IMG/VR virus record: IMGVR_UViG_3300017991_000002
Coordinates: 62,001 to 126,000 of that record
Length of the DNA: 64,000 nucleotides
Direction: 5' to 3' (one strand)
Shown piece after piece: positions 12,074 to 53,795 of the stretch (position 1 is the stretch's first letter; each line of letters opens with the position of its first letter). A program made the translations under genes and the position numbers. The notes below the pieces were generated by a model. That model searched no databases. It worked only from the letters and a program-made list of their open reading frames with translations, and was not told the DNA's origin.

Positions 12074-12550
12074 ATGACAAGAAAAGTCAGAGTCAACAAC
12101 AACCACAATATTGTTCACCAGATTACCTTACAGAATGTAGAGAATCTACGGAAGATGGAGGAAAAAATCAAGAGTGAGTTGAAAGAGGTGGTCGAGAAAA
12201 GAAAGGAAGCTGAGGACGAGGTTCTTGATAAGATCAAGAGACGGTTCTCGGTCGAACCGGGTGAACTGTCCGCCAAGATCGAAGAGAAAACGAAACGAAA
12301 CTCGGTCAGCTGGAAGACAGAATTCGTCTCCTTTGTTGGGAAACAGATCCACAGTAGACTGAGACGGAGCACCGATATACTCGAAAAGCTGATAGAAATC
12401 TGCGGTTCCCAGAAGAAAGCGAAATCCATCCTCAAGAAATTTTCCAATAACGAGGATGCTGCTTTTATTCATGCCGCGGGAGAGGCGGAAGCAAAGAAAA
12501 TCTCCGACAGCCAGCCTGAGGAGATCCAGGAAATATTAGTTATCGAATAG
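12074..12550 (+). CDS. Coiled-coil hypothetical protein with N-terminal RKVRV
   Basis: AGGAGGT RBS; starts MTRKVRV. Confidence 0.8.
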   Translation: MTRKVRVNNNHNIVHQITLQNVENLRKMEEKIKSELKEVVEKRKEAEDEVLDKIKRRFSVEPGELSAKIEEKTKRNSVSWKTEFVSFVGKQIHSRLRRSTDILEKLIEICGSQKKAKSILKKFSNNEDAAFIHAAGEAEAKKISDSQPEEIQEILVIE

Positions 12551-12559
12551 TTTACCAGC

Positions 12560-12586
12560 AGGGGCCCTTTTTGGGCCCCTCCTTTT
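12560..12586 (+). terminator. Intrinsic terminator
   Basis: AGGGGCCC-TTTTT-GGGCCCCT-CCTTTT. Confidence 0.7.
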
Positions 12587-12596
12587 GGAGATTATT

Positions 12597-13019
12597 ATGG
12601 GCACCTTTAAGATTGGTAAAGCTTCCATAGCTTCCCTTGCATTCCGGCAGTTGGAGCTCATGGACAACGATTTTCAATATGCCAAGTATTGTCTGTCCTC
12701 TACCCTGCCTCCTCTGTTAGAATTCTTTACTGATCTCCCAAGTGAGGAGATCGCTGAAGTCAATACGAAATTAATAAAACGAACAGACGGGGGTTGGAAT
12801 ATTATAGTCAGGGCGTTGACGGAAGTGAACAGGGATTGTACTAATAGTGCGTTGAAAACTCTTCCAGACCATGCAATAGTTCAGTTCAGAGACGGGGGTT
12901 TCGAAATAACATTCAAGTTCCCGGGACCGAAAATGTTCAGATCCAGGGTATGGGAAGGTTTAGTAGCGCCAGATACCAGAAAGCCTGTTAGGAAGTTAAA
13001 CATCAATAAGGAGGAGTAG
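12597..13019 (+). CDS. Hypothetical protein with RKLNI tag
   Basis: GGAG RBS; ends PVRKLNINKEE*. Confidence 0.75.
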   Translation: MGTFKIGKASIASLAFRQLELMDNDFQYAKYCLSSTLPPLLEFFTDLPSEEIAEVNTKLIKRTDGGWNIIVRALTEVNRDCTNSALKTLPDHAIVQFRDGGFEITFKFPGPKMFRSRVWEGLVAPDTRKPVRKLNINKEE

Positions 13020-13021
13020 CT

Positions 13022-13927
13022 ATGTCACATTTCACAGTTCTCGTTATCGGCGGCGACCCAGACGGGCTCTTAGAGCCTTATTGGGAGCTTGATTTGAGTG
13101 CCGAGGAGATGATTAATGATCCGAGGGCAGAGTTCAAAATTGAGGTTATTAACACCCCCTCCACAGGTGTTATACCTCCCCCCGGTTCTCGATTTAATTA
13201 TCCTCATGATGTAGAGACAGTGGATGAGTTGTTTGCCAAATTCAAATCCGAGCATCCGGACAGGGCTGATCAATACGGAGACATTCGTCAGTGGCTGGAC
13301 GTTTGGCACGGCTTTACCTACAGCGAGGAGCACAATGCATGGGGGTATTGGAGCAATCCCTATGCTAAATGGGACTGGTACCAAATCGGCGGCAGATGGG
13401 CAGGACTCCTTGTCCTGAAACCAGGAAAGAAGGGTCATAGGGGAGAGGAAAGTTGGACCTGGGACGGAGAGGGTCCTTACAAACCAGACGATAATAGGGC
13501 CAGAGTAGATCAGGCATTGTTTGATGACATTGACTGGGACTTTATGGACACCCCTACGGAGAAGGAACTCAAAAACATGGAATCGATATGGTACCATAAT
13601 GTCGAAAATCCGCTGACCAATGAACAGCTGCAGAGTGTGTCGGAGGAGGAAAGACGTGAGATACTGCAGTTTAGGTCTTTTTACAACCGTCAATACTTTG
13701 TTGATCGGTACGGCACCCTCGAGAAGTATATTGAGGCCGAAGGTAAGTTTTCGACCTACGCTGTTCTGGATGCCGCGGGGTGGCATAGTCCCGGTGATAT
13801 GGGGTGGTTTGGTATGTCTACAGAGTCTCATGAGGATTCAGTACTATGGTCTTTAAAATTTAGAGAGAACTTTTTAACAAACGTGGATCCGACAGAATTG
13901 ATCACTGTCGTTGATTGCCACATTTAA
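13022..13927 (+). CDS. Conserved phage protein (NP.AKWDWY.IGGRW family)
   Basis: MSHFTVLV start, G.MGWFG, terminal VDCHI. Confidence 0.85.
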   Translation: MSHFTVLVIGGDPDGLLEPYWELDLSAEEMINDPRAEFKIEVINTPSTGVIPPPGSRFNYPHDVETVDELFAKFKSEHPDRADQYGDIRQWLDVWHGFTYSEEHNAWGYWSNPYAKWDWYQIGGRWAGLLVLKPGKKGHRGEESWTWDGEGPYKPDDNRARVDQALFDDIDWDFMDTPTEKELKNMESIWYHNVENPLTNEQLQSVSEEERREILQFRSFYNRQYFVDRYGTLEKYIEAEGKFSTYAVLDAAGWHSPGDMGWFGMSTESHEDSVLWSLKFRENFLTNVDPTELITVVDCHI

Positions 13928-13941
13928 CAAAGGAGGTTTTT

Positions 13942-14628
13942 ATGGGAACAAGAGGAGCTTATGGATTCAGAATCAATGGTAAGGACAAAATCACTTACAA
14001 CCATTATGATTCCTATCCCAGTTATCTCGGTTCGAGTATTTTGGGGTTTATTGAAGAGACTCCTATCGAGGATATGAAGAGTATAGCAGAGAAGATAACC
14101 CTTATCATAAATCAAGATGCTGCCCCATCCGAGCAAGATATTTCCAGATACAAGGACTTCATGGATCTTGAAGTCAGTAAACAAAGTGAGAAAGATTGGT
14201 ATTGTCTTCTTCGTAAGGCACAGGGTAATCTCAACATCTACAAGAACCCTTCGTTCCTTCATATGATTGACAACCATGATTTCCTTCTGGACAGTCTGTT
14301 TTGTGAGTGGGCATATATTATTAATCTTGACGAGAAGGCCCTCGAGATTTATACCGGGTTCAATAAGAACAGACACGCGAAAGGCAGGTATGCAAGTGGT
14401 AAAGATCCCCAAAGCGATAAAGATTACTACGGTGTGGCCCTTGTTGTCAGCATACCGTTAAGTGCCCTGAAGGAGGATAAAGAGGGAGCGGTAAAGATAG
14501 TCAGGTGCTCAGATTTCTCTCAGATACCTTATGGTAAGGAGACTAAGAAAGAGATCATTGAAATGCTGGGAGCGTCGGACAGCCCTGAAAAATCGAAAAG
14601 GGTTCTTAAAGTCCAGGAGTCTGTGTAA
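13942..14628 (+). CDS. Conserved phage protein (MGTR...HYDSYP family) with RVLKV tag
   Basis: DSLFCEWAYIINLD motif; ends KRVLKVQESV*. Confidence 0.85.
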   Translation: MGTRGAYGFRINGKDKITYNHYDSYPSYLGSSILGFIEETPIEDMKSIAEKITLIINQDAAPSEQDISRYKDFMDLEVSKQSEKDWYCLLRKAQGNLNIYKNPSFLHMIDNHDFLLDSLFCEWAYIINLDEKALEIYTGFNKNRHAKGRYASGKDPQSDKDYYGVALVVSIPLSALKEDKEGAVKIVRCSDFSQIPYGKETKKEIIEMLGASDSPEKSKRVLKVQESV

Positions 14629-14975
14629 TGGGATTGGATAACTTTTGGGAGCTTCCTGACGGAAGTGAACCGCCTGACCTTAACCCACCACTAAATTTAT
14701 GTGGGGGCATGTTCTCCGGACATGGAGGAGGCTCGTTTCGTGGTAAGGTTTATAACGGCCTCATTGAGGAGATAACAGGGGTGTCACTTTACCAGGATAA
14801 GATTGACAATGATACCATAATCGAGATGGCCCTTGCACTCTCTGAGGTAGATCCTGGTTCCGAGGTCATTAGGAGGCACTCAGGATGGGATACTGCAGAG
14901 GATGAATTTAAAGACCTTGTGAGGATGTTTATGACCTATGCTGAAATGGGGGCTGTTTTGAGAGGATGGTGGTAG
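14628..14975 (+). CDS. Conserved phage protein (MGLD...SFRGKVY...GWW)
   Basis: TAATG overlap; motif pattern. Confidence 0.8.
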   Translation: MGLDNFWELPDGSEPPDLNPPLNLCGGMFSGHGGGSFRGKVYNGLIEEITGVSLYQDKIDNDTIIEMALALSEVDPGSEVIRRHSGWDTAEDEFKDLVRMFMTYAEMGAVLRGWW

Positions 14976-14976
14976 T

Positions 14977-15144
14977 TTGGAAAGGGTCGTCATTATTGTT
15001 AACGGGGGACTTGTAGAGTCCGTATTTTCAACAGCGAAAGAGATGGACGTTTATGTCGTCGATGTTGATCACATGATCGGGGATGAAAAGCCTGATGAGG
15101 TTATTGACCAAGAATACTACAGCTCGGGAGCGAAGAATGACTGA
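14977..15144 (+). CDS. 55-aa small acidic protein
   Basis: TTG start; RVVIIVNGGLVESVF...VVD; fills the gap between neighbours. Confidence 0.6.
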   Translation: MERVVIIVNGGLVESVFSTAKEMDVYVVDVDHMIGDEKPDEVIDQEYYSSGAKND

Positions 15145-15388
15145 ACCATTCTGCACCAAGTGCAGTAAAACCATGGATTGTTATAAGGTAGGCGCAGCAG
15201 TAGTTACAATGGCCAGAAACGAAGAAGGGGAAAAATTCCCTCTAACATTGCGGTGGGGGGACATTTATAAATGCCCCTCCTGCGGAAACGAAGTAATTAC
15301 AAACTTTGGAAGTTCAAATTCGAATGCGGCAGAGGTTGAAGCAAACGTTAAAAACTTATCTTCTTTTTTTGAGGAGGATGTCTCTTAA
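15137..15388 (+). CDS. Zn-ribbon protein
   Basis: CTKC...CPSC. Confidence 0.75.
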   Translation: MTEPFCTKCSKTMDCYKVGAAVVTMARNEEGEKFPLTLRWGDIYKCPSCGNEVITNFGSSNSNAAEVEANVKNLSSFFEEDVS

Positions 15389-15699
15389 TGACAGACATAC
15401 TTAAATGTCCTTTTTGCGGAAGCAGTCATCTTTACAGGATAGAGGCAGTGTGGGCCCTTGCACGAATAGAGCCAGTTGTTAACTCTGTATTCGAGCTAGA
15501 TTGGACGTACACAGGGGAAACTGATGTAATATGGGATTCTCAAGGGAGGAAACTTGTACCTGACGGCGTACCGGAATTCCAATGTGCTGAGTGTGCACTA
15601 GAATTTGACAGTAACCTTAAACCATCTCATTCTTCCGATAAATTAAAGAGGAATGAGAGAGTCAAGACAGGAAGAGTTCTAAGACTTAAAAAGGAGTAA
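15388..15699 (+). CDS. Zn-ribbon protein with RVLRL tag
   Basis: CPFC...CAEC; ends GRVLRLKKE*. Confidence 0.8.
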   Translation: MTDILKCPFCGSSHLYRIEAVWALARIEPVVNSVFELDWTYTGETDVIWDSQGRKLVPDGVPEFQCAECALEFDSNLKPSHSSDKLKRNERVKTGRVLRLKKE

Positions 15700-15702
15700 A
15701 CA

Positions 15703-16065
15703 ATGGACGATAAACTCGCCAAAGAAATATTCGACATTAAACCAGAATGGTTTAGGGATCGATGCTCTATCTCTGTCGGGGATGGATGGTTCAATATCCT
15801 GAGGATATTGGTTGGACATTTAAAAGATGTAGTCAAGGATCAGAAATTTTCTATAACCACTATCAAGGAGAAGTTCGGCGGTCTGCGGTTTTATGTATCG
15901 GCCGTTGAGGGGGAAAGGGAATTTGACAAGGTAAATTGCCTTATAATGTTTGCCGAGAGTATGAGCTTTGTTACTTGCGAATACTGTGGACGCCCTGGAA
16001 AACCAAGGAGTGGGTCATGGGTCAAAACACTGTGCGACGACTGCCTGGAGAAGAAGAGGCCATAA
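15703..16065 (+). CDS. Conserved phage Zn-binding protein (KEKFGGLRFY family)
   Basis: GDGW, KEKFGGLRFY, TCEYCG.PG, W..TLCDDC. Confidence 0.85.
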   Translation: MDDKLAKEIFDIKPEWFRDRCSISVGDGWFNILRILVGHLKDVVKDQKFSITTIKEKFGGLRFYVSAVEGEREFDKVNCLIMFAESMSFVTCEYCGRPGKPRSGSWVKTLCDDCLEKKRP

Positions 16066-16688
16066 ACGATTCAATAAGTAATGTAAAGGGACACCTTGAA
16101 CCTCTTGCTCTTTTTAGCCTTAAGGAATTGGGCAGAGATTTGGTTTCCTATTTCAACCGTATAAGTGTTACCGGAACCTCACTGGAAGTGGTTGGGATAC
16201 GGCTATTCAGAACACATGGCTATGTAGCTCTTAAATGTACCCTGGAGAACGGGTACAAGGAGACTCGCCTACTCCAGATAACCATAAAAAAGAGGGTAGC
16301 GTCTTATGTGTGTCATGTATTTGAAGAGGGATACTTTAATCATTTTGATTGCCCAGATAGTATATTAAGCCTGCTGTCCCCGCCTGATACGGAAGTGATC
16401 GGGGAGTGGAGGGAGAACTGCAGAGAGAGGAACATGAGGTATGATGAAGCAAGGAGAGCGTGGAGAAGGTTAAAACCTGGTGACATTATCGAGGTTCATG
16501 GTTATAGATACATGCTGATAAGCAAAAGGGGCCAGATATGGTCGCAGGAAGTAGACTGGGACGCCCCATTTCGCTGTGCATTCATCAGGCCCCACTGTAA
16601 ACTCCACAAGACCGAAGTTGTCGGTAAAAGATCCATTTGTCCCCTTGTGAAGCAGCAATTTGGCCTAAGGACAATACCTAGGAGATGA
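16062..16688 (+). CDS. Hypothetical protein (start uncertain, possibly ATA)
   Basis: DCP.SIL.LLSP......EWRE.CR motif. Confidence 0.65.
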   Translation: MNDSISNVKGHLEPLALFSLKELGRDLVSYFNRISVTGTSLEVVGIRLFRTHGYVALKCTLENGYKETRLLQITIKKRVASYVCHVFEEGYFNHFDCPDSILSLLSPPDTEVIGEWRENCRERNMRYDEARRAWRRLKPGDIIEVHGYRYMLISKRGQIWSQEVDWDAPFRCAFIRPHCKLHKTEVVGKRSICPLVKQQFGLRTIPRR

Positions 16689-17053
16689 GCATGAAAATAG
16701 GAAGGAGTTTAAGCGCCTGTGTTGCAGACATTGCTGAGGGAAAAGTTGATATAAACGACGTTGAATATATTGAAGCAGGAACGAAGGCTAAGTCCGATGA
16801 AGATTGGGAGTATGTATTCAAGTTTTATGCGAGAACGATGTGGAGAAAAGATCCGGACAAGTGCCGCGAGATTGCACAAAGTCTCATAAAAGAGCATAAG
16901 GTAATTCAAACAAGACTCATGAGACTGCCTGCCAAACCATTCCCCACATGGAGACCCGCCACCAGGACAGTGTTTATTTCAAAGAGGGAAATGTCGAGTA
17001 GTCCAATTACTCGGACCAAGAGAATAATTAAACTAGGAAAGGAGACTCCATGA
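16685..17053 (+). CDS. Conserved phage protein with RIIKL tag
   Basis: IG.SLS.CV.DI..GKV; ends KRIIKLGKETP*. Confidence 0.8.
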   Translation: MSMKIGRSLSACVADIAEGKVDINDVEYIEAGTKAKSDEDWEYVFKFYARTMWRKDPDKCREIAQSLIKEHKVIQTRLMRLPAKPFPTWRPATRTVFISKREMSSSPITRTKRIIKLGKETP

Positions 17054-17514
17054 GTAACAAAAAACTCTATGTGATTATGATCTGGGGGGATGTTGAGCCC
17101 AAGGTATTTGGACCTTATAATACTGCCCACGAGCGTGACCGGAAGGCACTTGCTCTAAAGGAAGAGCACGGTGACAATAACGGCATTTTTAGGGCGGAGG
17201 TTGGGGACTATCTATTGTCCGTTCGGGCTTATCCCCATCATTTTTTTAACCCCGAAGATACTCAGTGTAGGATATGCGGCAATATGCATACCCCGAAGGG
17301 AGAAGAGCTATGTCGACGGTGCAATATTCTGAGCCAGAGTATAGAACACAATCCAGAGGTAGCAATTAAAATATTGGAGAGTATCCCAGAATCTGGAATA
17401 GCCGATATGAAGGAAGCGTGTCAGGCCGTTATCGATCGGTGGGAGGAAGGTGACCTTGCCGAGGCTGCCAGACAATGCCAAGATGCTCTCAATAGATTGA
17501 ACCTGAAGGAGTAA
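17050..17514 (+). CDS. Hypothetical protein with CxxC pairs
   Basis: GDVEP.V.GPY; CRIC/CRRC. Confidence 0.75.
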   Translation: MSNKKLYVIMIWGDVEPKVFGPYNTAHERDRKALALKEEHGDNNGIFRAEVGDYLLSVRAYPHHFFNPEDTQCRICGNMHTPKGEELCRRCNILSQSIEHNPEVAIKILESIPESGIADMKEACQAVIDRWEEGDLAEAARQCQDALNRLNLKE

Positions 17515-17516
17515 AA

Positions 17517-17858
17517 ATGCCTTCTTTACTTATGGACATTGTATGGGAATGCTGGAATGAGGAGAGCAGCTGTAAATCTTGCCCCTGCAAGGATCACTGT
17601 AAAGATGGGAGGGTTTTTTATGAGGAATGCGACATAGAGTTTTACTACGAGGAAGAGAACAAGGGTAGTTGGCACGAGGAATCTCATGGCTCACATGTTG
17701 ACATTTCGTCTGTCTACTACAGGGGAGAAGATATTTTCACCACACTCCCGTCTTCACTCCTCGATGACCTAACCGAGGAAGTTTTAACTGCGTATGAAAA
17801 TCAATGCGCCGATAATTATATGCAGGAGCGGTATGAAGCCTACCTCGAAAGAGATTAG
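17517..17858 (+). CDS. Acidic Cys-rich hypothetical protein
   Basis: AAGGAG RBS. Confidence 0.75.
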   Translation: MPSLLMDIVWECWNEESSCKSCPCKDHCKDGRVFYEECDIEFYYEEENKGSWHEESHGSHVDISSVYYRGEDIFTTLPSSLLDDLTEEVLTAYENQCADNYMQERYEAYLERD

Positions 17859-17950
17859 GAAATATGTGAGTTATTATGCATACCGCAATATGAGTATTTT
17901 GTTCACACAACAACGTCGGGGGACTATACCCGACAAAAAGGAGGAGTAAC

Positions 17951-18373
17951 ATGAATCTCTGGGCATGGACATTCAACGTAAAACAAGAGATGGTAGAGAC
18001 TAATGAGAAGAAAGAAAATGGGAAACCGAGGTTTAAGTCCGCTTATAAGCTTAATCAAGTGTTCCCCAAAGTTATTCAAGGAGGCAGGATCAAGAAGGAA
18101 TGGAGCGGGGGAGAAGTTGGAAAAGGGAAGCTTTACAGGAATGTGGAGTTTACAGACAACGAGCACAAAAGAAGAACGGCCAGAGCTTTTGAGGAGGCAA
18201 ACAGGGAGATAAATCGTCTTCTTAATGATGGGAGGAATCTTATGGGTGTCGTCGTTTGTGAGAAGGACGGCAAATACGGCATCTCCGTATGTTCAGCATA
18301 CGAAGATAAGTTCAAGCTTCCCAGGGGGATTGATATCGCGAGGGGGAGAGTGGTCAAGGCATTGAACACATAA
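17951..18373 (+). CDS. Hypothetical protein
   Basis: GGAGGAG RBS; G.SVCS..DKF....G..IA.GR. Confidence 0.8.
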   Translation: MNLWAWTFNVKQEMVETNEKKENGKPRFKSAYKLNQVFPKVIQGGRIKKEWSGGEVGKGKLYRNVEFTDNEHKRRTARAFEEANREINRLLNDGRNLMGVVVCEKDGKYGISVCSAYEDKFKLPRGIDIARGRVVKALNT

Positions 18374-18386
18374 TTCCGTAATAAGG

Positions 18387-18426
18387 CAGGGAGGATCCGT
18401 CGTCTTCTTAGCACGGATCCTCCCTG
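18387..18426. repeat. Perfect 14-bp inverted repeat
   Basis: CAGGGAGGATCCGT-N12-ACGGATCCTCCCTG; no U tract. Confidence 0.85.
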
Positions 18427-18463
18427 GGGGAGATACAGAGTAACTCTTTCGGTAGGTAAGACT

Positions 18464-18604
18464 ATGGAAGGATGGATTATTGTTAATGTTGAATTTGACG
18501 AAGTGTACGATCCCGAGATTTATAGATCGTACGAGGAGGCCAAGTCATCAGAATATGCTGACTTGGATAATGCCATGATTATTAAGATAGGCACATTTAA
18601 CTAG
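18464..18604 (+). CDS. 46-aa acidic protein
   Basis: MEGWIIVNVEFDEVYDPE...; fills the gap. Confidence 0.5.
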   Translation: MEGWIIVNVEFDEVYDPEIYRSYEEAKSSEYADLDNAMIIKIGTFN

Positions 18605-18618
18605 GGAGGAGGTTCTAT

Positions 18619-19065
18619 ATGACTTCAGTAAGATCTTATGCCGTCCTTGGGGTAAGGATTGATAAAGAGAAGCTTTATAAGAGGGTAAGAATCAGGGGAT
18701 GTCAAGAGTGCGATGATGAGGGGGGAATCTCTCCCAAGAATGAGATGTGCCCAGATGAGGAGTCAAGCAAGAACTTCACTTACTGTCCTGTATGTGGCCA
18801 TGCCCCATTTTGTGATGAGTTGATTCCCATAGAAGGATTTGATCCATGGGATTTAACGCTTCATAGAGAGGAGCTAATATCCTCCCATGAGGACTTCTAC
18901 TATGGAGTATGGTCACAGGACTCATGGGATGGCCGTGACTGTGCAAACTTCACAGGGTTGATGGATCCGGCAGCGGCAATGGAAGAGATTAAAAACTTCC
19001 TCGAGCCTCTAGGGTTATGGAACCCCGACGAGTTCGGGATATGGGGTATACTGGACGCATCATGA
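18619..19065 (+). CDS. Hypothetical protein with Zn-finger insert
   Basis: GGAGG RBS; CQEC, CPVCG. Confidence 0.75.
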   Translation: MTSVRSYAVLGVRIDKEKLYKRVRIRGCQECDDEGGISPKNEMCPDEESSKNFTYCPVCGHAPFCDELIPIEGFDPWDLTLHREELISSHEDFYYGVWSQDSWDGRDCANFTGLMDPAAAMEEIKNFLEPLGLWNPDEFGIWGILDAS

Positions 19066-19238
19066 AAGCAAAAAGGTGGTATTTGAAGTGGCCGTTGGAT
19101 GCCTATGCACTCGGCCCAAAAGAGTTCGAAAAACCTGTAAGTGAGAAGGAGGTCAGGGATTTTGCCCGGAGATGGGAGGGAGTCAAGCGTCTTCCTCAAG
19201 GGTTTCATTGTTGGCCTGCTTCAGAGAAAGGAAATTGA
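19062..19238 (+). CDS. Small hypothetical protein
   Basis: ATGA overlap; V.RLP.GF.CW. Confidence 0.65.
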   Translation: MKAKRWYLKWPLDAYALGPKEFEKPVSEKEVRDFARRWEGVKRLPQGFHCWPASEKGN

Positions 19239-19239
19239 A

Positions 19240-19554
19240 ATGGATAATTTATGGGACTTCTATCATGGGGAAATTCCAGGGTACGTTGTTTCTGCTGATG
19301 AGGAATCTTTCACCTTAAATATACGAGGGGTTCTCGATGAACGGATAGAACTTGTGGTTACTGTGAACGATGTTGCGGAGTACTTCGCTACACAGGCTCG
19401 ATCGATGTCGGGAATGAGATCACTGGCTGGTCACTACGGAGATTGGAGGCAAATAGATCAACTGGCACAGGAAGTATTATCATGGTTCAAATTTGTGAAT
19501 ATAGAGGGAATGAGAAAAGCGTCTTTGTCTCTTGGATTGATCCCAAAGTTCTAG
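19240..19554 (+). CDS. Hypothetical protein
   Basis: AAGGA RBS. Confidence 0.7.
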   Translation: MDNLWDFYHGEIPGYVVSADEESFTLNIRGVLDERIELVVTVNDVAEYFATQARSMSGMRSLAGHYGDWRQIDQLAQEVLSWFKFVNIEGMRKASLSLGLIPKF

Positions 19555-19566
19555 GAGGGTAAGAAT

Positions 19567-19947
19567 ATGCTAATAATAAAACCATTGGATGATATTCACG
19601 GTCCCGAGTCAGAGAACACTATTCAAGATCTTTATAGGTTGTACAATTGCGTAAAGGTCAATCTTCCAGAGGATGAATCAAAGTGGGTCTCTGGTAATGG
19701 CGAGGGTGTATGGGCTGCTCCTTGCTCTGAGGAGGACTCTCAAAAATGTCGGGATGATAACAGCTACCATGAAGATGCTTTTGTCAGATTAATGAATCAG
19801 CCCCTTTTTCACCCACTTATCTGGGGAGATAAAATCAGGGTACAGACACGAGGTGATAAAAGACCTGTCGCCTATTTGGAGGAGATGTCCGAGGAAGACA
19901 TGAAGGGATACATTAACAGGCTCCTTGCAGAGGATGAAAAAGAGTAA
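19567..19947 (+). CDS. Hypothetical protein
   Basis: GGAGG RBS; GNGEGVW motif. Confidence 0.75.
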   Translation: MLIIKPLDDIHGPESENTIQDLYRLYNCVKVNLPEDESKWVSGNGEGVWAAPCSEEDSQKCRDDNSYHEDAFVRLMNQPLFHPLIWGDKIRVQTRGDKRPVAYLEEMSEEDMKGYINRLLAEDEKE

Positions 19948-20262
19948 ATGGACGAAAGGATGCAACATATTCAGAATATGGCGGAAAGGCGTGGGTCTGC
20001 AATCGTGTGTAAACTGAACCTCGAGGATTCCTCCCGTAACCGCTCGCAGCTCACGGTTCGTGTAGATTCAACAGGTTGGTTATCTTATCAGTTAGGAAAC
20101 GGGTCCCTGAGCAACCTGCAATGCAGTGGATTCGGCCCAGAAAGATTTGATAGACATGATACGGTTAATGAACTTGCTAAGACCATAAAATTCTGGGTTA
20201 GGGGAGGCACAAGAAAGGTGCTGGCAGTTATCACTGGAAAGGAGATGTATGATGCCGGCTGA
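19948..20262 (+). CDS. Hypothetical protein
   Basis: Abuts the upstream stop. Confidence 0.7.
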   Translation: MDERMQHIQNMAERRGSAIVCKLNLEDSSRNRSQLTVRVDSTGWLSYQLGNGSLSNLQCSGFGPERFDRHDTVNELAKTIKFWVRGGTRKVLAVITGKEMYDAG

Positions 20263-20566
20263 AATGAAATCAGAAGTAACATTCGAAGTTGACGCAAGAT
20301 CTCTGGCCAAAGCATTTTGTGATATGGGTTCCAACGAACAGGCCGAGTTCTTTTCCCATGTCCGATTCTTCAGTTCGCAGTGGGAGGACGGTACTTGGGT
20401 TCATCAGGCACATTGGATCTGTGAGGACTTGAGTGAGGATGGGAGATACATTCTTAGGGCATTTCTCGCTTACCTCTCACCGGGAGAGAAAGCACCGAAT
20501 CCTCCTAAAAATGTGAGAAAATCTGTCGGATCAACAGCAACCAGGAAACTTACCGTTAAAAAGTAA
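20249..20566 (+). CDS. Hypothetical protein with RKLTV tag
   Basis: LA.AFC.M...EQA.FF; ends ATRKLTVKK*. Confidence 0.8.
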   Translation: MMPAEMKSEVTFEVDARSLAKAFCDMGSNEQAEFFSHVRFFSSQWEDGTWVHQAHWICEDLSEDGRYILRAFLAYLSPGEKAPNPPKNVRKSVGSTATRKLTVKK

Positions 20567-20574
20567 GGAGATGT

Positions 20575-20901
20575 ATGATGGCTTATGAAAATCAGATCAA
20601 GTGTAATCGGTGTGGGAAGTCTATACTTCCCATGCCGGAGGACGCCTCTCCAGAAGAGTTGTTATGCGATGGCTGTTATGAGTCAGAGCAGGTAAAAGCT
20701 GCATATGAGAATAGTGAATGTCCTGATTGTGGCGAGGCAATACCTGTCCATGTAAAAGAGGGTGAAGCCTGTAGGAACTGTGGCCATGTGTTTTGGAGTG
20801 ACCACACAAAAGAGAATAGCGATTATTGCCCAAAATGCGGTTGCCATTGGATTACTCACAATGACGACGGAAGCTGCGTCGATAATAAGGAGGCGGAATG
20901 A
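20575..20901 (+). CDS. Multi-Zn-finger protein
   Basis: Five CxxC pairs. Confidence 0.8.
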   Translation: MMAYENQIKCNRCGKSILPMPEDASPEELLCDGCYESEQVKAAYENSECPDCGEAIPVHVKEGEACRNCGHVFWSDHTKENSDYCPKCGCHWITHNDDGSCVDNKEAE

Positions 20902-21095
20902 GCAAACGTCTGGTTACAACCATACCCGTGGGTAACTTGAGGTACCTTCGGGAGAAGCTAGGGGAGAGAGCTTTTCAGGACGCTGTCCAGCAGGTGGTGC
21001 ACAGGGTAGGGGCCGAACTGAGAGAAGAGCTTTTATCTCATGCGGACAACTATTCAAATGAGTGGTATCATATTCGGATTGAGCCGGGCCGATGA
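20898..21095 (+). CDS. Hypothetical protein
   Basis: AGGAGG RBS, ATGA overlap. Confidence 0.65.
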   Translation: MSKRLVTTIPVGNLRYLREKLGERAFQDAVQQVVHRVGAELREELLSHADNYSNEWYHIRIEPGR

Positions 21096-21212
21096 TGGAG
21101 ATTATTGCGATAAGTGCGGTCTTGGTCCAGAAAACCATAAACCAGATGGGGCATGCGATGATGATTGGGCCAAGCACCCTAACCCTGCAGGTCCTGGTTA
21201 CATAGAGGATGT

Positions 21213-21767
21213 ATGAGAGAAATAACTGATTATCTTGACTCCCTTGTAGAGGAGTGGATAGAGAAAGTAAAACCACTGATAGTTACGAGAGCCTCAGACA
21301 CAGCCAGCTTCGTAGAGTATTGGTGGATTAAACGATCTGAGCTACACGAAGACAGAGTATCTCAATGGAGCAATATAACAAAGGGTACCGAGTATACAGC
21401 TGAAATGTTTTACAATGCCGAGTCTTGGGAGGAGGCGGCCCATGTATGTCTTGCAGCGGGCTTTTCGTCGTTTGAGACTAAACCTGAGCACGCCTGGTGC
21501 GGTGATCTTGTTCGACTGGCCGATGATATGGTTATTGCAATAAATGACAGGTATCCGCACATCGGCTGGCCCTGGGCGTGTAGAAATCATATTCCGGAAA
21601 GGCTTGAATGCATAGCACCGAAGGAGGACTTTGGTGTGTACAGTTTATTCGAAAGGATAATGGCGGAGCAGATCATCACGTTTGCTTTATGGGTCCCGCT
21701 TTGTATGTGTGATGACAGCCCGCCCCTGCTTACCCCGAAACTCAGTGTGGTTGGAGGTAAGCTATGA
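21213..21767 (+). CDS. Hypothetical protein
   Basis: GAGG RBS, 184 aa. Confidence 0.75.
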   Translation: MREITDYLDSLVEEWIEKVKPLIVTRASDTASFVEYWWIKRSELHEDRVSQWSNITKGTEYTAEMFYNAESWEEAAHVCLAAGFSSFETKPEHAWCGDLVRLADDMVIAINDRYPHIGWPWACRNHIPERLECIAPKEDFGVYSLFERIMAEQIITFALWVPLCMCDDSPPLLTPKLSVVGGKL

Positions 21768-22009
21768 GGTTCTACAAAACCGTAATCATGATGGAGGTGC
21801 TGTCAGACTCTGATGGCCCCTCCGTCCCAGACATGGAGCTCATAGATCTTGCCGAGCAGGTAGTTCATGGTGACATGAGTGCTAAGTGGGATGTGACTCA
21901 GCACTATGAGATTAATCGTGAGCAGTTTATTAAAGAGTGCGAGCTACAAGGAACGTACCCGGGGTTCTTCCTCGGAGATGATTATGAAGATGAGGAGGAT
22001 GATGATTAA
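21764..22009 (+). CDS. Acidic conserved phage protein
   Basis: FYKTV...EVLS...QG..PGFF. Confidence 0.75.
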   Translation: MRFYKTVIMMEVLSDSDGPSVPDMELIDLAEQVVHGDMSAKWDVTQHYEINREQFIKECELQGTYPGFFLGDDYEDEEDDD

Positions 22010-22160
22010 ACGCATATTGTACTTCCTGAGACGAATAGATCTCTACTTCACGGGGGGTTGGGAGCTTTGTGGTAACTGTAAACGCTTCAGTCCCTCTCGT
22101 TATCTATGGTGCCCTTATTGCGGGGGCGACGAGAGGAGGTATCGAGATTATGGCGGATAG
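22002..22160 (+). CDS. Small Zn-ribbon protein
   Basis: CGNC...CPYCG. Confidence 0.6.
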   Translation: MIKRILYFLRRIDLYFTGGWELCGNCKRFSPSRYLWCPYCGGDERRYRDYGG

Positions 22161-22506
22161 AGTATTTCTTCCACCGAATTACATAAAAGCGCCTGACTTA
22201 CATCCACTGGATACGTATATGGAGAGGTATGAGGAGTATCGGAGGGCTATACAGGCTTTTTGTGAGGAGCAAGGTAAAGGGTCATTTCGAGGCCGGGAGA
22301 TAAGGTTTCCCGTAGCTGATGGGTACGCATGCTATTTTATATTTAGCCTTAGGCCAGTGGTCTTGATAAAGGATGATAGTGGGGACGGCTGGGACTATGC
22401 CCACATCGATGACTTGAAAGTCAGTACCCTCAAAGAGGAGGCTGAAAGACTCGAAAAACTTAACAAGCTGTTTGCAGGCAACAAGAAGGAGGAGGACGAT
22501 GCGTAA
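22150..22506 (+). CDS. Conserved phage protein
   Basis: G.EIRFPVADGYA.Y motif. Confidence 0.8.
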   Translation: MADRVFLPPNYIKAPDLHPLDTYMERYEEYRRAIQAFCEEQGKGSFRGREIRFPVADGYACYFIFSLRPVVLIKDDSGDGWDYAHIDDLKVSTLKEEAERLEKLNKLFAGNKKEEDDA

Positions 22507-50086: not shown

Positions 50087-50806
50087 ATGGAAACACTAAG
50101 GCAGAAGGCTTTTAAGGATCTTTGTCAAGACTTGGCTCAAGATAGCTATCAACTATACTGCAATGATTCCAATCTCATAACGGCGGAGGATGTTGCCGAT
50201 TTAATAATCCCTATAGCAAAGATAATCCTCTTATCAACTTTCAGGGGAGTTCCAGAACACATATGGGATGACCTTATTTCAGAGGCTTATGTAAAAGTTT
50301 ATTATGCCATCAAGGACAAAAAGTGTGAACACGGCAGACCAATATTTCCCTACTTTTATAGTGTAATCAGGAATACATTTATAACTCATATAGACTCGTA
50401 CCTTCCCTTAGCAAAAAACACCATTCCAAAAGGATATGTCCCCCCCAAGAGCGGATACAGTATAAGAGCTGTTGAAACGCAAATGTTCTTGGAGAAACTA
50501 CCCGAAGTAATACGGGGCAGAGTTCTTAGGATGACAAGATTTACCGGGTTTGAATATGAAGCCTGCAAATACATATTAAACAGATTTCTTATGGACAAAA
50601 GAGTTGTTTACATTGTCCTGACAAACAGGTATTATATAGAAGAAGAGCACATACCGTTTTTTGTTGATTATGTGATTACGTTATACAGGATAGCATTATT
50701 CGGTATAAAAAAGAGATACTTGTGCACATCAGAACCGGATGAGTACACAACATGGGTCAATAAGGCCGCACGGAAGGGAGAGCGTGAAAGATCTGAAGAT
50801 AACTGA
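50087..50806 (+). CDS. Sigma-factor-like protein (possible late sigma)
   Basis: DDLISEAY.K...F.YF..VIRN.F region-2 pattern. Confidence 0.55.
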   Translation: METLRQKAFKDLCQDLAQDSYQLYCNDSNLITAEDVADLIIPIAKIILLSTFRGVPEHIWDDLISEAYVKVYYAIKDKKCEHGRPIFPYFYSVIRNTFITHIDSYLPLAKNTIPKGYVPPKSGYSIRAVETQMFLEKLPEVIRGRVLRMTRFTGFEYEACKYILNRFLMDKRVVYIVLTNRYYIEEEHIPFFVDYVITLYRIALFGIKKRYLCTSEPDEYTTWVNKAARKGERERSEDN

Positions 50807-51224
50807 TGTTGGAGAGATCAGGCGTAGGAAAGGTTTTAAAGACCTTCTCCTCTTCGCTTTAATAATCGATAACAAGTATACACTCCTGCCGGAAATTTAT
50901 AAGGTGTTCGGTAAGAAATACCTCCTCAAGTTCCTCGATGTATTCGGAGGATCCACCATATCTGTTCCCTCCCATGAAGACCTTTTGTACACTGTAAAGA
51001 ACGTTCAGATATATCTGGATGCAAAATTCCGTGTTGACGGCTATCCTACGTTCTCTGAGATAGCAAAAAAATATGGAATATCAAAGAAGGAAGCTTTGGA
51101 AATATATCACGAAATGGGAGAGGCTGTAAAAAAGAGCGGGATTCTTCTCGATGATAACTTTGATATTCCCCAAGGAGATGATGACATATGTCAAGGACTG
51201 GAAGAGATCCTCGAGAGTCAGTAA
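50784..51224 (+). CDS. Mor-like transcription activator
   Basis: FGG.TI.VP...IY...EIAKKYGIS. Confidence 0.6.
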   Translation: MKDLKITDVGEIRRRKGFKDLLLFALIIDNKYTLLPEIYKVFGKKYLLKFLDVFGGSTISVPSHEDLLYTVKNVQIYLDAKFRVDGYPTFSEIAKKYGISKKEALEIYHEMGEAVKKSGILLDDNFDIPQGDDDICQGLEEILESQ

Positions 51225-51712
51225 GAGAGTTTATGGAATCATTGGCAACAAGGTCCAATGTAACTCCTGCTGCACGACTGGTTTTGGACGAGGATCCGAA
51301 TTCGGAAAAGTTAAAATATGAAATAGCCAGACGAATCTATATGAGAGAAGGTATGAGAGGCTGGGGAAAGATAGCCGAGAGGGTAGATGTGATTATAGAC
51401 TTTTATTCCGACGATGATTCAGAACAGATAAGAGATATGAGTCATCGGGACAGGATCAGGCTGCTGCATGAACTCTTCGGACAATCACAAAATTTTCTCC
51501 GTAACCTTAATGAGGCTATACGGACGGATACCGAATCTACTGGAATGGAGAAAAACCAGAACATCATCAATATACTGGCCTTCAGTGACGACGGTTCAGC
51601 CCTAACATCTGAGGAAGCACACCTTCAAAGAAAATCAAGACAGCGTGTAAGGGGTTTCATATCTGATCTACTGCTGTCAGCCAAAGGAAATGATGACAAA
51701 CAATCAGACTAG
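51188..51712 (+). CDS. Hypothetical protein, possible small terminase
   Basis: Helical; directly upstream of terL. Confidence 0.4.
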   Translation: MSRTGRDPRESVREFMESLATRSNVTPAARLVLDEDPNSEKLKYEIARRIYMREGMRGWGKIAERVDVIIDFYSDDDSEQIRDMSHRDRIRLLHELFGQSQNFLRNLNEAIRTDTESTGMEKNQNIINILAFSDDGSALTSEEAHLQRKSRQRVRGFISDLLLSAKGNDDKQSD

Positions 51713-53795
51713 ACGGCTCAATATACCACTGCCACGATTTGATGACGAGGACATAGACCAAGAAATCTTTCTCGATGTTATCAGAGACTACGATATTAAC
51801 CTGTATGATAACTTCTTAGCAATGGATGAAGAAGAGCAGGAACAAGTAATTCAGATCGTATCAGACTTAATGACCCAAGGCAGCTCAGGCTCCTTGAAGA
51901 GCATATGGCAGCAAGATTTTATCAAGGTTCCTCCTACTCCCCAGGAATTTTTAGAGGATGAATATTTTGTCGGAAGAACGGCCAGATCACTCTATCCTGT
52001 GTGGAAAAAAGAACTCCTCTACGTCCTTGAGCCAAGAAATGACATAAGAGAGTGGATCATCTCGGGCTCGATAGGCAGTGGGAAGTCATTTGCGGCAACA
52101 TATGCCCAGGCCTATAAACTTGCTGTCTTATCCTGCCTTAGGAGCCCTCAGAAGTATTATGGCCTTGCTGAAGGAACTAGCCTGATTTTTTCGGTTTTTA
52201 ATCTGACTATAGACAAGACAGAGCTCACCCTCTACCAGGATCTTAAGAACCTTCTAAACTCATCCCCCTTCTTCAGAGAAACCTTCCCCCTGAAAACAGT
52301 ATATGGTTCAAAAGGGGAGGAGAAAGAGGTCCAGATGCCAAAAGGGGTTCATCTTATTCCCGGGTCTAAAGCAGTACATGCAATGAGTACCAACGTATTC
52401 TCCTGTATCCTGGACGAGATGAACTTTCGAGACTCTAAAAAGTCAGCGACCTATACTGAAAAGAGTGAAGCATTCAATCTATACACTCAGATACATCGAC
52501 GTATTGTCTCCAGGTTTATTACAGTCCCAGGTATCCTGGTTCTCATATCTTCTCGCCAAACAATCACCGATTTCCTCGAGGAGCATATAGAGAGGAATAG
52601 AACATCTCCTCATGTTCATATATCTGATTACGCCTTGTGGGAGACACTTCCTCCTCATAAATTTGAAATTTACCACAAGACTGGTAGAACTTTCTCCATG
52701 ATGATAGGGGATAGATCGAATAACAGGAATTCTCGGGTTTTAAAGGAGGACGAAGATCCTCCGGCCGATGCTACGATCAAAACCGGCATACCCATAGACC
52801 TATTGGAAGAGGCCATTAAGGATCCTAACGGATTTGCTCGTGATGTTGCCGGCGCTGCTACTTTCCCCTCCGAACCATTGATTTCGGACAGACAGCGTAT
52901 CGTTGCTTGTATTGATAATAGAAGACATCCGTTCGATTCAGAATCCATTGTCTTGAACTTTAAGTCCAATACAAAGGTACAAGATCATCTTATTGAAAGC
53001 ATGATAGTATGGGATACCGGAGATCGCGGGCTTCGTCCTATATTTCACCCGGAAAAGATACGTGTGATAGGATTGGATTTGAGCCTTACCGGGGATTCAA
53101 CCGGTATCGCAATGGGCTGCCCGGTAACAACGAAAGTGGTTCGAACCTTGCAAAGGAACCAAAAGACTGGTGAACTGGAATACAAGAAAATCCCCAGATG
53201 GATCATTCACTACGATTTTTTCCTGGAAATAAACCCTCCAGAATATGGTACGGGGGAGATTGATCTGGAGGGTATACAGGAGTTTGTGGTATATTTACGA
53301 GATAGTCTTCATTTTAATATTTGGAAAGTGAGCTGCGATGGTTATCAGTCCAGACATATGAGGCAAAATTTAATAAAGCGTAATTTTGATGCTGTTATCA
53401 CCTCGGTCGATGTTGACGACATAGCTTATATCGACTTAAAACAGGCTATTATAGAGGAAAGGGCATTATTTTATAATTATACTCCTTTTATGGAGATAGA
53501 ATACCTGCAACACTTTAAAAACGCAGGAAGGGTGGGATCCAAAAGAAAAGGACGGGTGGACCACTTAAAAAGTAAAAAGAAGGATGTATGTGACGCGGCA
53601 GCAGCGGTCGCTTTCCACTGCAATGCATACTCCCTGAGGGAACCGCTGGTTCCGACTGAGGATGATATTAAAAAACTTCAGACAGGAAGAGATAAAAGTA
53701 TCAAAGGGGAGAGAGTGTCTGATATGCTATATCATGACTATGTGAGTAAATCGTCGAAAGGTAGAAAGACGAGAAAAATTATCGGTATAAACTAA
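51690..53795 (+). CDS. terL: Terminase large subunit
   Basis: GSIGSGKS, ILDE, ISS; nuclease GLDLS...D, DGYQS, DH...KDVCDA. Confidence 0.9.
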   Translation: MMTNNQTRRLNIPLPRFDDEDIDQEIFLDVIRDYDINLYDNFLAMDEEEQEQVIQIVSDLMTQGSSGSLKSIWQQDFIKVPPTPQEFLEDEYFVGRTARSLYPVWKKELLYVLEPRNDIREWIISGSIGSGKSFAATYAQAYKLAVLSCLRSPQKYYGLAEGTSLIFSVFNLTIDKTELTLYQDLKNLLNSSPFFRETFPLKTVYGSKGEEKEVQMPKGVHLIPGSKAVHAMSTNVFSCILDEMNFRDSKKSATYTEKSEAFNLYTQIHRRIVSRFITVPGILVLISSRQTITDFLEEHIERNRTSPHVHISDYALWETLPPHKFEIYHKTGRTFSMMIGDRSNNRNSRVLKEDEDPPADATIKTGIPIDLLEEAIKDPNGFARDVAGAATFPSEPLISDRQRIVACIDNRRHPFDSESIVLNFKSNTKVQDHLIESMIVWDTGDRGLRPIFHPEKIRVIGLDLSLTGDSTGIAMGCPVTTKVVRTLQRNQKTGELEYKKIPRWIIHYDFFLEINPPEYGTGEIDLEGIQEFVVYLRDSLHFNIWKVSCDGYQSRHMRQNLIKRNFDAVITSVDVDDIAYIDLKQAIIEERALFYNYTPFMEIEYLQHFKNAGRVGSKRKGRVDHLKSKKKDVCDAAAAVAFHCNAYSLREPLVPTEDDIKKLQTGRDKSIKGERVSDMLYHDYVSKSSKGRKTRKIIGIN

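What the first reader, a model, noticed from the sequence alone, without database searches (positions are those of the whole stretch)
12074..51725. The same motif occurs at the N-termini of DNA polymerase, large terminase and two accessory proteins
SEEN: PolA begins M-RKLNL-P (38878); TerL begins MMTNNQT-RRLNI-P (motif 51711-51725); gene 12074 begins MT-RKVRV; gene 10120 has RILKV at its N-terminus as well as RVLRI at its C-terminus. Weaker C-terminal variants occur in the UvsY-like protein (QKLRI) and gene 56776 (RYVRI). INFERENCE: if real, the tag works at either end, needs no free carboxylate and is used by core enzymes. That fits a docking or localisation signal better than an ssrA-type degron.
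Basis: partly seen in the sequence, partly recalled or inferred. Interest (0 to 1): 0.7.

Follow-up and report, generated by a model that had tools for sequence, protein, structure and literature searches.

The report
Terminal peptide tag shared across phage proteins
An uncultivated 205-kb phage puts the same five-residue peptide, R-[K/R]-L-[R/K/N]-hydrophobic, on the floppy ends of about 74 unrelated non-structural proteins. The copies at the start of its DNA polymerase and large terminase are real and conserved, so many phage proteins probably dock to one still-unknown partner.

Summary
PolA (MRKLNLP), TerL (RRLNIP) and the gene at 12074 (MTRKVRV) start with the motif at the stated coordinates.

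**Same motif as the C-terminal tails.** It is the motif R-[KR]-L-[RKN]-[IVLM] that ends 62-74 of 334 predicted genes, against 0.4 expected. All carriers lie in non-structural regions, and 67 of 74 have no paralogue once the tail is removed.

**N-terminal enrichment.** There are 4 hits in the first 15 residues against about 0.4 expected. None of 2000 local shuffles reached 4.

**Start sites.** The starts are sound.

**Conservation.** All three testable N-terminal copies persist in sister-phage orthologues of 40-68% identity. The flanks diverge, and in TerL all five motif codons differ synonymously.

**Level of selection.** Selection acts on the peptide, not the DNA.

**Structure.** In an AlphaFold model of TerL the motif lies in a disordered N-terminal extension.

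**Weaker cases.** RILKV and RYVRI are weak matches.

**Function.** This is inferred only. The motif is probably a docking tag for one receptor that engages protein termini. My best guess is an AAA+ unfoldase or protease: host ClpX, or the phage's own AAA ATPases with its LonC-type peptidase. A non-proteolytic localisation signal is not excluded. The one complex prediction gave no answer.

The parts
38881..38895 (+). N-terminal motif RKLNL of the UDG-exonuclease-PolA fusion protein (gene 38878-41754), directly after the start Met
   Evidence: the ATG is 2 codons after an in-frame stop; the 60%-identical orthologue P0002 begins MRKLNI. Pfam domains UDG, exonuclease and PolA.
51711..51725 (+). 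N-terminal motif RRLNI of the large terminase (gene 51690/51693-53795)
   Evidence: the 68%-identical orthologue P0022 begins MSVRRLNI; all five motif codons differ synonymously; pLDDT is below 50 for residues 1-12 and there is no secondary structure before residue 23.
12080..12094 (+). N-terminal motif RKVRV of the 158-aa protein encoded at 12074-12550
   Evidence: AGGAGGT ribosome-binding site; the 40%-identical orthologue in L048 begins MPRRVNL.
10123..10137 (+). Weak N-terminal variant RILKV of the 138-aa protein encoded at 10120-10536 (GTG start)
   Evidence: The match is below the matrix threshold. The start is plausible (GAGG 6 nt upstream) but not certain.
10513..10527 (+). C-terminal variant RVLRI of the same protein
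   Evidence: matrix score 7.5.
12043..12057 (+). C-terminal RKLRI of the DUF932 protein (gene 11320-12063), a typical C-terminal copy
   Evidence: the 63%-identical orthologue P0193 ends ARRLRMV, and more distant homologues lack the tail.
43046..43060 (+).
   Evidence: matrix score 12.2. No family match.
56920..56934 (+). RYVRI near the C-terminus of the 63-aa protein encoded at 56776-56967; a weak match, not supported
   Evidence: matrix score 2.0.
233..29000 (+). Block of small genes in which at least 16 products end with the motif. Examples: 233-841, 4096-4257, 4254-4643, 4981-5220, 6802-7329, 7326-7595, 7585-8094, 8094-8552, 8851-9138, 9113-9367, 9673-9939, 12597-13019, 26799-27314, 27602-27904, 28481-28978
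1580..4027 (+). LonC-type Lon-like protease (815 aa), a candidate phage-encoded partner only
   Evidence: AAA_32, LonB lid, LonC helical and Lon_C domains. GDSASS...K dyad intact, Walker A degenerate (GTGR) as in all cellular homologues.

Best explanation
The N-terminal RKLNL (PolA), RRLNI (TerL) and RKVRV (gene 12074) are genuine copies of one short linear peptide motif, R-[KR]-L-[RKN]-[IVLM]. This phage places the motif in the disordered termini of about 74 otherwise unrelated non-structural proteins, usually 0-12 residues before the C-terminus and occasionally 1-6 residues after the start Met.

**Shown:**
- It is selected as a peptide.
- It is modular.
- It is confined to non-structural genes.
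- It is conserved in sister phages at both ends.

**Inferred:**
- All carriers dock to one common receptor that engages protein termini.
- The most likely kind of receptor is an AAA+ unfoldase or protease recognition or tethering site. That could be host ClpX, or the phage's own BCS1/Cdc48-like AAA ATPases working with its LonC-type peptidase.
- The tag would then set turnover or remodelling of early proteins. PolA and TerL carry the Asn variant.

My confidence that the motif is a real, functional, shared peptide signal is about 0.9. My confidence in the AAA+/protease-tether reading is about 0.35-0.4, and the figure below refers to that full statement.
For: **Enrichment**
- C-terminal: 62 hits against 0.37 expected.
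- N-terminal: 4 hits against about 0.4 expected, and 0 of 2000 shuffles reached 4.

**Peptide-level selection**
- All six Leu codons are used in the motif.
- Nucleotide information is confined to first and second codon positions of the 15-nt motif, with no conserved flanks.
- Only 27% of copies lie where they could double as the next gene's Shine-Dalgarno sequence.

**Modularity and distribution**
- 67 of 74 carriers have no paralogue once the tail is removed.
- 74 of 252 genes in non-structural regions carry it, against 0 of 82 in structural regions.

**Conservation in sister phages**
- PolA: MRKLNI.
- TerL: MSVRRLNI, with 5 of 5 motif codons changed synonymously.
- Orthologue of gene 12074: MPRRVNL at 40% identity.
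- DUF932 orthologue: ends ARRLRMV.
- TerL relatives at 53-57% identity lack the N-terminal motif, and their loci have no C-terminal tails.
- Thirty distant phage loci show only background levels.

**Structure**
The motif lies in a disordered N-terminal extension of TerL.

**Points favouring an AAA+/protease reading**
- The position is strictly terminal.
- The number of carriers is large.
- Structural proteins and most replication enzymes lack it.
- The phage encodes a LonC-type peptidase and two classic-clade AAA ATPases.
- The XB peptide RGGRPALRVVK binds the ClpX N-domain wherever it sits in a chain, and when fused to GFP it drives ClpXP-dependent degradation (PMC3983244, PMC12373786). Twelve tails end L-[RK]-hydrophobic-x-[KR]-COOH like XB.
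- ClpX degrons occur at both termini, and phage lambda O (TNTAKILNFGR) and MuA (..NRRKKAI) are classic examples (PMC12723719, PMC3983244).
Against: - No binding partner has been shown. The single complex prediction (ClpX zinc-binding domain plus two tails) returned 'no answer' and counts neither way.
- The invariant Arg and Lys/Arg before the Leu are absent from XB, and the terminal Lys of XB is present in only 12 of 74 tails. The phage motif is therefore not an XB motif by sequence.
- If a universal host protein such as ClpX were the receptor, the tag should be widespread in phages. It is seen only in this lineage.
- The LonC-type family lacks a canonical Walker A and is thought to be ATP-independent.
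- One of the AAA genes appears truncated or interrupted.
- It is not obvious why a polymerase and a terminase should carry a turnover tag.
- The host is unknown and there are no expression data.
Confidence: 0.4

Rival explanations
1. A non-proteolytic docking or localisation signal. The tag would recruit carriers to a phage-specific hub or compartment, such as a replication or packaging factory, the SSB-DNA filament or a shell, without affecting their stability.
For: - It works at either end and needs no free carboxylate.
- PolA, TerL and a protein next to the SSB and RecA genes carry it.
- The large number of carriers suits an address label.
- The lineage-specific distribution fits a phage-encoded receptor.
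Against: - Helicases, primase, SSB, RecA, the SbcCD-like protein, RuvC and the sigma-like factors of the same module lack it.
- No clamp was found in the complete genome, and no compartment gene was recognised among the proteins scanned.
- The motif is always within 12 residues of a terminus. A pure docking motif need not be.
Confidence: 0.3
2. A prohead or capsid cargo-loading peptide, by analogy with encapsulin cargo peptides or the T4 capsid-targeting sequence. Carriers would be packaged into the head.
For: - Two carriers are early-region paralogues of the major capsid protein and of the S77 prohead protease.
- TerL must dock on proheads.
- From general knowledge, cargo peptides can be N- or C-terminal.
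Against: - Carriers sit only in non-structural, early-looking gene blocks.
- About 74 cargo species plus a DNA polymerase is implausible.
- The motif contains no protease-type cleavage site.
Confidence: 0.07
3. A variant sliding-clamp-binding motif (beta-clamp QL[SD]LF or QLxLxL type), used by PolA, TerL and others to bind the host clamp.
For: - KLNLP and RLNIP resemble QLSLPL or QLNLF-type motifs. This rests on my own knowledge of the family, not on a test.
- From general knowledge, such motifs occur at N-termini, C-termini or internally.
Against: - Gln occupies the first position in 1 of 63 copies, and an aromatic residue occupies the last position in 2 of 63.
- Basic residues are invariant instead.
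- About 74 small unrelated proteins would all have to bind the clamp.
- The phage encodes no clamp.
Confidence: 0.05
4. The N-terminal occurrences are chance matches or lie upstream of the true starts; only the C-terminal tails are real.
For: - The motif is short.
- The PolA copy lies in a 29-nt overlap with the upstream primase-like gene.
- RILKV and RYVRI are indeed weak.
Against: - 4 observed against about 0.4 expected, and 0 of 2000 shuffles reached 4.
- In the orthologues there is no alternative in-frame start within 60 codons downstream, and the overlap with the upstream gene is only 4 nt for PolA.
- All three testable copies are conserved while their flanks diverge.
Confidence: 0.05
5. 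A nucleic-acid-level signal, such as a ribosome-binding site for the next gene, a promoter or a terminator, that happens to translate as RKLRI.
For: - AGR Arg codons and purine-ending Leu codons are over-represented in the motif.
- 27% of copies lie at Shine-Dalgarno distance from the next start.
Against: - All six Leu codons are used.
- Third codon positions carry almost no information, and there are no conserved flanks.
- Distances to the next start range from 7 to more than 260 nt.
- The N-terminal copies are conserved through synonymous changes.
Confidence: 0.03

Closest known systems
SspB XB peptide (RGGRPALRVVK), the ClpX N-domain tethering module
   Same: - Short, basic and hydrophobic, with an L-R-hydrophobic core at the end of a flexible tail.
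- Reported to work regardless of its position in the chain and to cause ClpXP-dependent degradation when fused to a protein (PMC12373786, PMC3983244).
- Twelve phage tails end L-[RK]-hydrophobic-x-[KR]-COOH.
   Different: - The phage motif requires R-[KR] before the Leu, where XB has P-A.
- The terminal Lys is optional in the phage motif.
- It sits on about 74 cargo proteins rather than on one adaptor.
- Binding to ClpX is untested (one search gave no answer).
ClpX degrons of phage proteins: lambda O N-motif 1 (TNTAKILNFGR) and MuA C-motif 2 (..NRRKKAI)
   Same: - Terminal, unstructured tags on phage replication or transposition proteins, at either the N- or the C-terminus (PMC12723719).
- KILNF resembles RKLNL and RRLNI; RRKKAI resembles KRKLRI.
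   Different: - In ClpX the N- and C-terminal classes are different sequences. Here one and the same motif is used at both ends.
- The similarity is by eye only.
ssrA tag (ClpX C-motif 1)
   Same: A C-terminal peptide tag shared by many proteins.
   Different: - ssrA must be at the C-terminus for recognition by ClpX (PMC12373786) and is non-polar (..YALAA).
- The phage motif is basic, is followed by 0-12 residues, also occurs at N-termini, and is genome-encoded.
Cargo-targeting peptides (encapsulin cargo-loading peptides, T4 capsid-targeting sequence, microcompartment encapsulation peptides)
   Same: Short terminal peptides on unrelated proteins that direct them to one protein shell. From general knowledge, they can be N- or C-terminal.
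   Different: - Different sequences.
- The carriers here are non-structural, early-region proteins plus a polymerase and a terminase.
- No shell or receptor has been identified.
Beta-clamp-binding motifs (QL[SD]LF / QLxLxL)
   Same: A five- or six-residue motif with Leu and a second hydrophobic residue two positions on, found at N- or C-termini of polymerases and repair proteins.
   Different: There is no Gln and no aromatic residue; basic residues are invariant; there are far too many carriers; and the phage has no clamp.

Membership tests
SspB XB-type ClpX N-domain tether | Sequence ..ALRVVK at the extreme C-terminus of a flexible tail (PMC3983244) | tested here: inconclusive
   An L-[RK]-hydrophobic core is in nearly all copies. 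The full L-[RK]-hydrophobic-x-[KR]-COOH form is in 12 of 74. The invariant R-[KR] upstream has no counterpart in XB.
SspB XB-type ClpX N-domain tether | Functions regardless of position in the polypeptide (PMC12373786) | tested here: met
   By sequence only: conserved copies at N-termini, and C-terminal copies with 0-12 residues following.
SspB XB-type ClpX N-domain tether | [quoted passage not shown] | tested here: inconclusive
   Complex prediction with E. coli ClpX residues 1-61 (two copies), zinc, PolA residues 1-18 and one tail gave 'no answer'. The host ClpX is unknown.
ssrA-type degron (ClpX C-motif 1) | Non-polar ..LAA-type end, recognised only at the C-terminus | tested here: not met
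   The motif is basic, is followed by 0-12 residues, and also occurs at N-termini.
Beta-clamp-binding motif | Gln at position 1 and Leu/Phe at positions 4-5 (QL[SD]LF); a clamp partner is available | tested here: not met
   Gln in 1 of 63 copies and Phe in 2 of 63. No beta-clamp or gp45-type clamp in the complete phage genome.
Nucleotide-level element (ribosome-binding site, promoter or terminator) | Conservation at the DNA level independent of reading frame, at a fixed distance from the neighbouring gene | tested here: not met
Capsid or encapsulin cargo-loading peptide | Carriers are packaged in the shell; the peptide binds the shell or scaffold protein | not testable with these tools
   Indirect evidence only: carriers are absent from structural gene blocks, but two are capsid-protein and prohead-protease paralogues.
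Lon family, LonC type (for the candidate partner at window 1580-4027) | Lon_C proteolytic domain with a Ser-Lys dyad; AAA-like module with degenerate Walker motifs and a helical insertion | tested here: met
   Pfam AAA_32, LonB lid, LonC helical and Lon_C domains. GDSASS and GGVNDK are conserved, and Walker A is GTGR in the phage protein and in 39 of 39 homologues.

The most novel reading that the evidence does not exclude
The phage runs its own proteome-wide addressing system. One genome-encoded five-residue tag, usable at either terminus and carried by about a fifth of its proteins including the polymerase and terminase, would be read by a phage-encoded receptor. Candidates are a BCS1/Cdc48-like AAA machine with a LonC-type peptidase, or an unrecognised hub or compartment. 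The system would schedule the fate or location of early proteins. No such virus-encoded tag-and-reader system is known for phages.
Probability: 0.3. Interest if true: 0.9.

Novelty: new variant of a known kind. Interest (0 to 1): 0.72.

Why it matters
Short terminal tags such as degrons, tethers and cargo peptides are known one protein or one host system at a time. Here a single phage has placed one tag on about 74 unrelated proteins and, in an N-terminal form, on two core enzymes.

If the reader of the tag is found, it would give three things:
- a handle on dozens of orphan early genes at once;
- a natural, position-independent tag for controlling proteins in bacteria;
- a possible example of a virus timing its own proteome by tagging.

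It also shows that genome-wide scans of protein termini can reveal function in uncultivated phages.

Tried and rejected
- **Close relatives in public phage collections.** None exist for PolA or TerL in cultured phages (25-30% identity) or in IMG/VR (TerL up to 32%). The metagenome scan returned only the window's own contig plus distant relatives.
- **Sister-phage sequence.** It came only as short contigs (L001, L002, L004, L005, L048). Co-occurrence of the tag with candidate receptor genes therefore could not be tested.
- **Lon homologues as a guide to tagged phages.** Rejected: the protein has thousands of cellular homologues at about 50% identity, and the best one sits in a bacterial chromosome.
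- **Phage-encoded partners sought and not found.** Clamp, gp45-type clamp, ClpP and ClpX-type zinc finger.
- **Complex prediction.** ClpX N-domain with tails gave no answer.
- **Function of carriers.** Family scans of 30 motif carriers (28 with a C-terminal tail) gave curated-threshold hits in four (ExoX-like C domain, DUF932, Api92-like ferredoxin-like domain, Gp23), plus a head maturation protease match in PHROGs and weak zinc-ribbon hits.
- **Literature.** Searches for a phage-wide terminal motif or a phage Lon degron found nothing relevant.
- **Shine-Dalgarno or DNA-element explanation.** Tested and rejected.
- **A resemblance to the T4 gp32 N-terminal FKRKST motif.** Considered from memory and dropped, because this phage's SSB-like protein (window 43103-44050) does not start that way.

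Full report
**What the window is.** The window is bases 62001-126000 of a single 205,367-bp contig. It is an IMG/VR virus record with direct terminal repeats, rated 100% complete, and is identical to JGI metagenome contig Ga0180433_10000036. It encodes a T4-type portal, a Gp23-type capsid protein, sigma-like factors, Mor, HU, a DnaB-like helicase, a weak primase-domain match, RecA, an SSB-like protein and a UDG-exonuclease-PolA fusion. It has no close relative among cultured phages or in IMG/VR. I called 334 genes with a simple codon-bias and ribosome-binding-site caller.

**The observation.**
- PolA: ATG at 38878, then RKLNL-P.
- TerL: ATG ATG at 51690/51693, with RRLNI-P at 51711-51725.
- Gene 12074: MTRKVRV, behind an AGGAGGT ribosome-binding site.
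- Gene 10120: GTG start, MRILKV at the start and ..KRVLRIRT at the end.

**The larger context.**
- *Frequency.* With a loose pattern, 63 of 334 proteins carry R-[KR]-L-[RKN]-[IVLM] within their last 17 residues. With a slightly wider pattern the count is 74.
- *Consensus.* Arg 61/63, Lys/Arg 63/63, Leu 58/63, Arg/Lys/Asn 63/63, Ile/Val/Leu/Met 61/63. An aromatic or Lys residue often precedes the motif, and 0-12 residues follow it, most often 2.
- *Chance expectation.* A weight matrix built from these copies gives 62 C-terminal hits against 0.37 expected from shuffled proteins.
- *Distribution.* Carriers make up 74 of 252 genes in the non-structural regions and 0 of 82 in the structural regions.
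- *Modularity.* After the tail is removed, 67 of 74 carriers have no paralogue in the genome, so the tail is a module on unrelated proteins.
- *Specificity.* Thirty loci from distant phages, plus the loci of TerL relatives at 53-57% identity, show background levels or none.

**Peptide or nucleic acid?** The signal is a peptide.
- All six Leu codons occur in the motif.
- Nucleotide information is confined to the 15 nt of the motif and is concentrated at first and second codon positions. Third positions carry 0.03-0.40 bit, and nothing is conserved on either side.
- Only 27% of copies sit at Shine-Dalgarno distance from the next start. Distances range from 7 to more than 260 nt.
- A mild excess of AGR and purine-ending codons remains unexplained.

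**Are the N-terminal copies more than chance?**
- In the first 15 positions there are 4 matrix hits: PolA, TerL, gene 12074, and genome 42187-42483 beginning MKEKERRKLRIPP.
- Whole-protein shuffles expect 0.44. Shuffling only residues 2-19 expects 0.37, and none of 2000 such shuffles reached 4.
- Internal positions give 6 hits in 52,612, against 3.6 expected. Five of them are strong, and all five lie in small proteins.
- RILKV falls below the threshold but matches a minor C-terminal subclass (RVLRI, RVLKV, RVLRL, RILRL). RYVRI is not supported. QKLRI is a good match.

**Are the starts right?**
- The PolA ATG is two codons after an in-frame stop.
- In the PolA and TerL orthologues no other in-frame start exists within 60 codons downstream.
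- The PolA motif lies in a 29-nt overlap with the upstream primase-like gene. In the orthologue the overlap is only ATGA, so the overlap does not explain the conservation.
- Distant homologues begin to align at PolA residue ~24 and at TerL residue ~20-80.
- In an AlphaFold2 model of TerL built on 30 homologues, residues 1-12 have pLDDT below 50 and the first helix starts at residue 23. The motif therefore lies in an N-terminal extension ahead of the fold.

**Conservation.** Only short contigs of sister phages exist, but every testable copy is kept.

| Protein | Orthologue identity | This phage | Orthologue |
|---|---|---|---|
| PolA | 60% | MRKLNLPKV | MRKLNIYGE |
| TerL | 68% | ..QTRRLNIPLP | MSVRRLNIEFP |
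| Gene 12074 product | 40% | MTRKVRV | MPRRVNL |
| DUF932 protein (C-terminus) | 63% | RSRKLRIQ | HARRLRMV |

- In TerL all five motif codons differ synonymously (AGA CGG CTC AAT ATA against AGG CGC CTG AAC ATC).
- DUF932 homologues at 45% identity or less have no tail.
- TerL relatives at 53% and 57% identity lack the extension, and their neighbourhoods have no tails.
- The tag system is therefore specific to a narrow lineage and is kept as a whole.

**What it most likely does.**

*Shown.* The motif is a modular, peptide-level, terminal signal shared by many unrelated non-structural proteins and by two core enzymes.

*Inferred.* All carriers bind one receptor.

*What kind of receptor?* Three features point to a machine that engages protein ends, such as an AAA+ unfoldase or protease:
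- the strict closeness to a terminus;
- the very large number of carriers;
- the absence of the motif from virion proteins and from most replication and recombination proteins (helicases, primase, SSB, RecA, SbcCD-like protein, RuvC, sigma-like factors).

*Two candidate readers exist.*
- The phage encodes a LonC-type Lon-like peptidase (window 1580-4027). Its Ser-Lys dyad is intact, and its Walker A is degenerate, as in all 39 aligned homologues.
- The phage also encodes two classic-clade AAA ATPases with BCS1/Cdc48-like modules. One has a hydrophobic N-terminus, and the other lies 3.5 kb upstream of the Lon gene.
The SspB XB peptide RGGRPALRVVK binds the ClpX N-domain (PMC3983244). It is reported to do so regardless of its position in a chain, and when fused to GFP it causes steady ClpXP-dependent degradation (PMC12373786). 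Twelve phage tails end L-[RK]-hydrophobic-x-[KR]-COOH.
- ClpX degrons occur at both termini, and lambda O and MuA are classic phage examples (PMC12723719, PMC3983244). By eye, KILNF in the lambda O tag resembles the Asn variants RKLNL and RRLNI.

*Limits.* These resemblances are leads, not tests. The one complex prediction allowed returned 'no answer' and counts neither way.

**Arguments against, and rivals.**
- A universal host receptor does not fit the narrow lineage distribution, which favours a phage-encoded reader.
- The invariant R-[KR] has no counterpart in XB.
- LonC-type proteins are thought to be ATP-independent.
- A non-proteolytic localisation or docking signal remains a serious rival, at about 0.3.
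- A prohead cargo peptide is suggested only by two carriers that are early-region paralogues of the capsid protein and prohead protease.
- A clamp-binding motif fails its sequence criteria, and the phage has no clamp.
- Chance, false starts and a nucleic-acid signal are contradicted by the tests above.

**Verdict.**
It is weak for RILKV and RYVRI.
The step to 'docking rather than degron' is not decided, because known tethers do both.
- The phenomenon as a whole looks new in scale and in its use of one motif at both ends. I found no description of it in the literature searches.

Noticed in passing
window 1580-4027 (+): The phage encodes an 815-aa LonC-type Lon-like protease, about 50% identical to thousands of cellular homologues. 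The Ser-Lys dyad is intact, and Walker A is degenerate (GTGR) as in the whole family.
   Followed up: partly
genome 169647-171777 (-), outside the window (L013:12647-14777): The Gp23-type major capsid gene is in two pieces (profile positions 30-183 and 215-354), separated by a 288-aa ORF with a TnsA-like endonuclease domain. This probably reflects an intron or mobile insertion.
   Followed up: partly
genome 58830-59993 (+) (L011:6830-7993): A Cdc48-like AAA gene ends halfway through the AAA domain (Pfam positions 1-65 of 131; PHROG profile 29-372 of 568) and is followed by a zinc-ribbon ORF. It may be interrupted or truncated.
   Followed up: no
genome 24320-25777 (-) (L007:12320-13777): A 485-aa AAA ATPase with a hydrophobic N-terminus. 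Its best solved relatives are the mitochondrial BCS1 proteins.
   Followed up: no
genome 134738-135736 (+) and 49742-50296 (-): Paralogues of the capsid protein (Gp23 domain) and of the S77 prohead protease lie in the non-structural regions, and both carry the C-terminal tag.
   Followed up: partly
window 53750-53795 (+), C-terminus of TerL: The TerL C-terminus ..GRKxRKIIGIN is conserved in relatives down to 53% identity, including those without the N-terminal motif. It is a separate basic and hydrophobic tail of unknown role.
   Followed up: no
window 38878-41754 (+): The polymerase is a three-part fusion: uracil-DNA-glycosylase-like domain, 3'-5' exonuclease and family A polymerase. The same architecture is seen in a few metagenomic homologues.
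   Followed up: no
genome 22609-22854, 40499-41098, 50903-51370 (-); window 27602-27904 and 61313-61561 (+): Five strong internal copies of the motif lie in small proteins, at least 20 residues from either end. They may be longer tails, mis-set gene ends or internal sites.
   Followed up: no
motif codons genome-wide: AGR Arg codons (54 of 61 at the first position) and purine-ending Leu codons are over-represented in the motif relative to the same genes elsewhere. This is unexplained.
   Followed up: partly
L003:1-2624 and L006:9438-12107: TerL relatives that lack the tag encode an ~890-aa protein with a major-vault-protein shoulder domain near the packaging genes.
   Followed up: no
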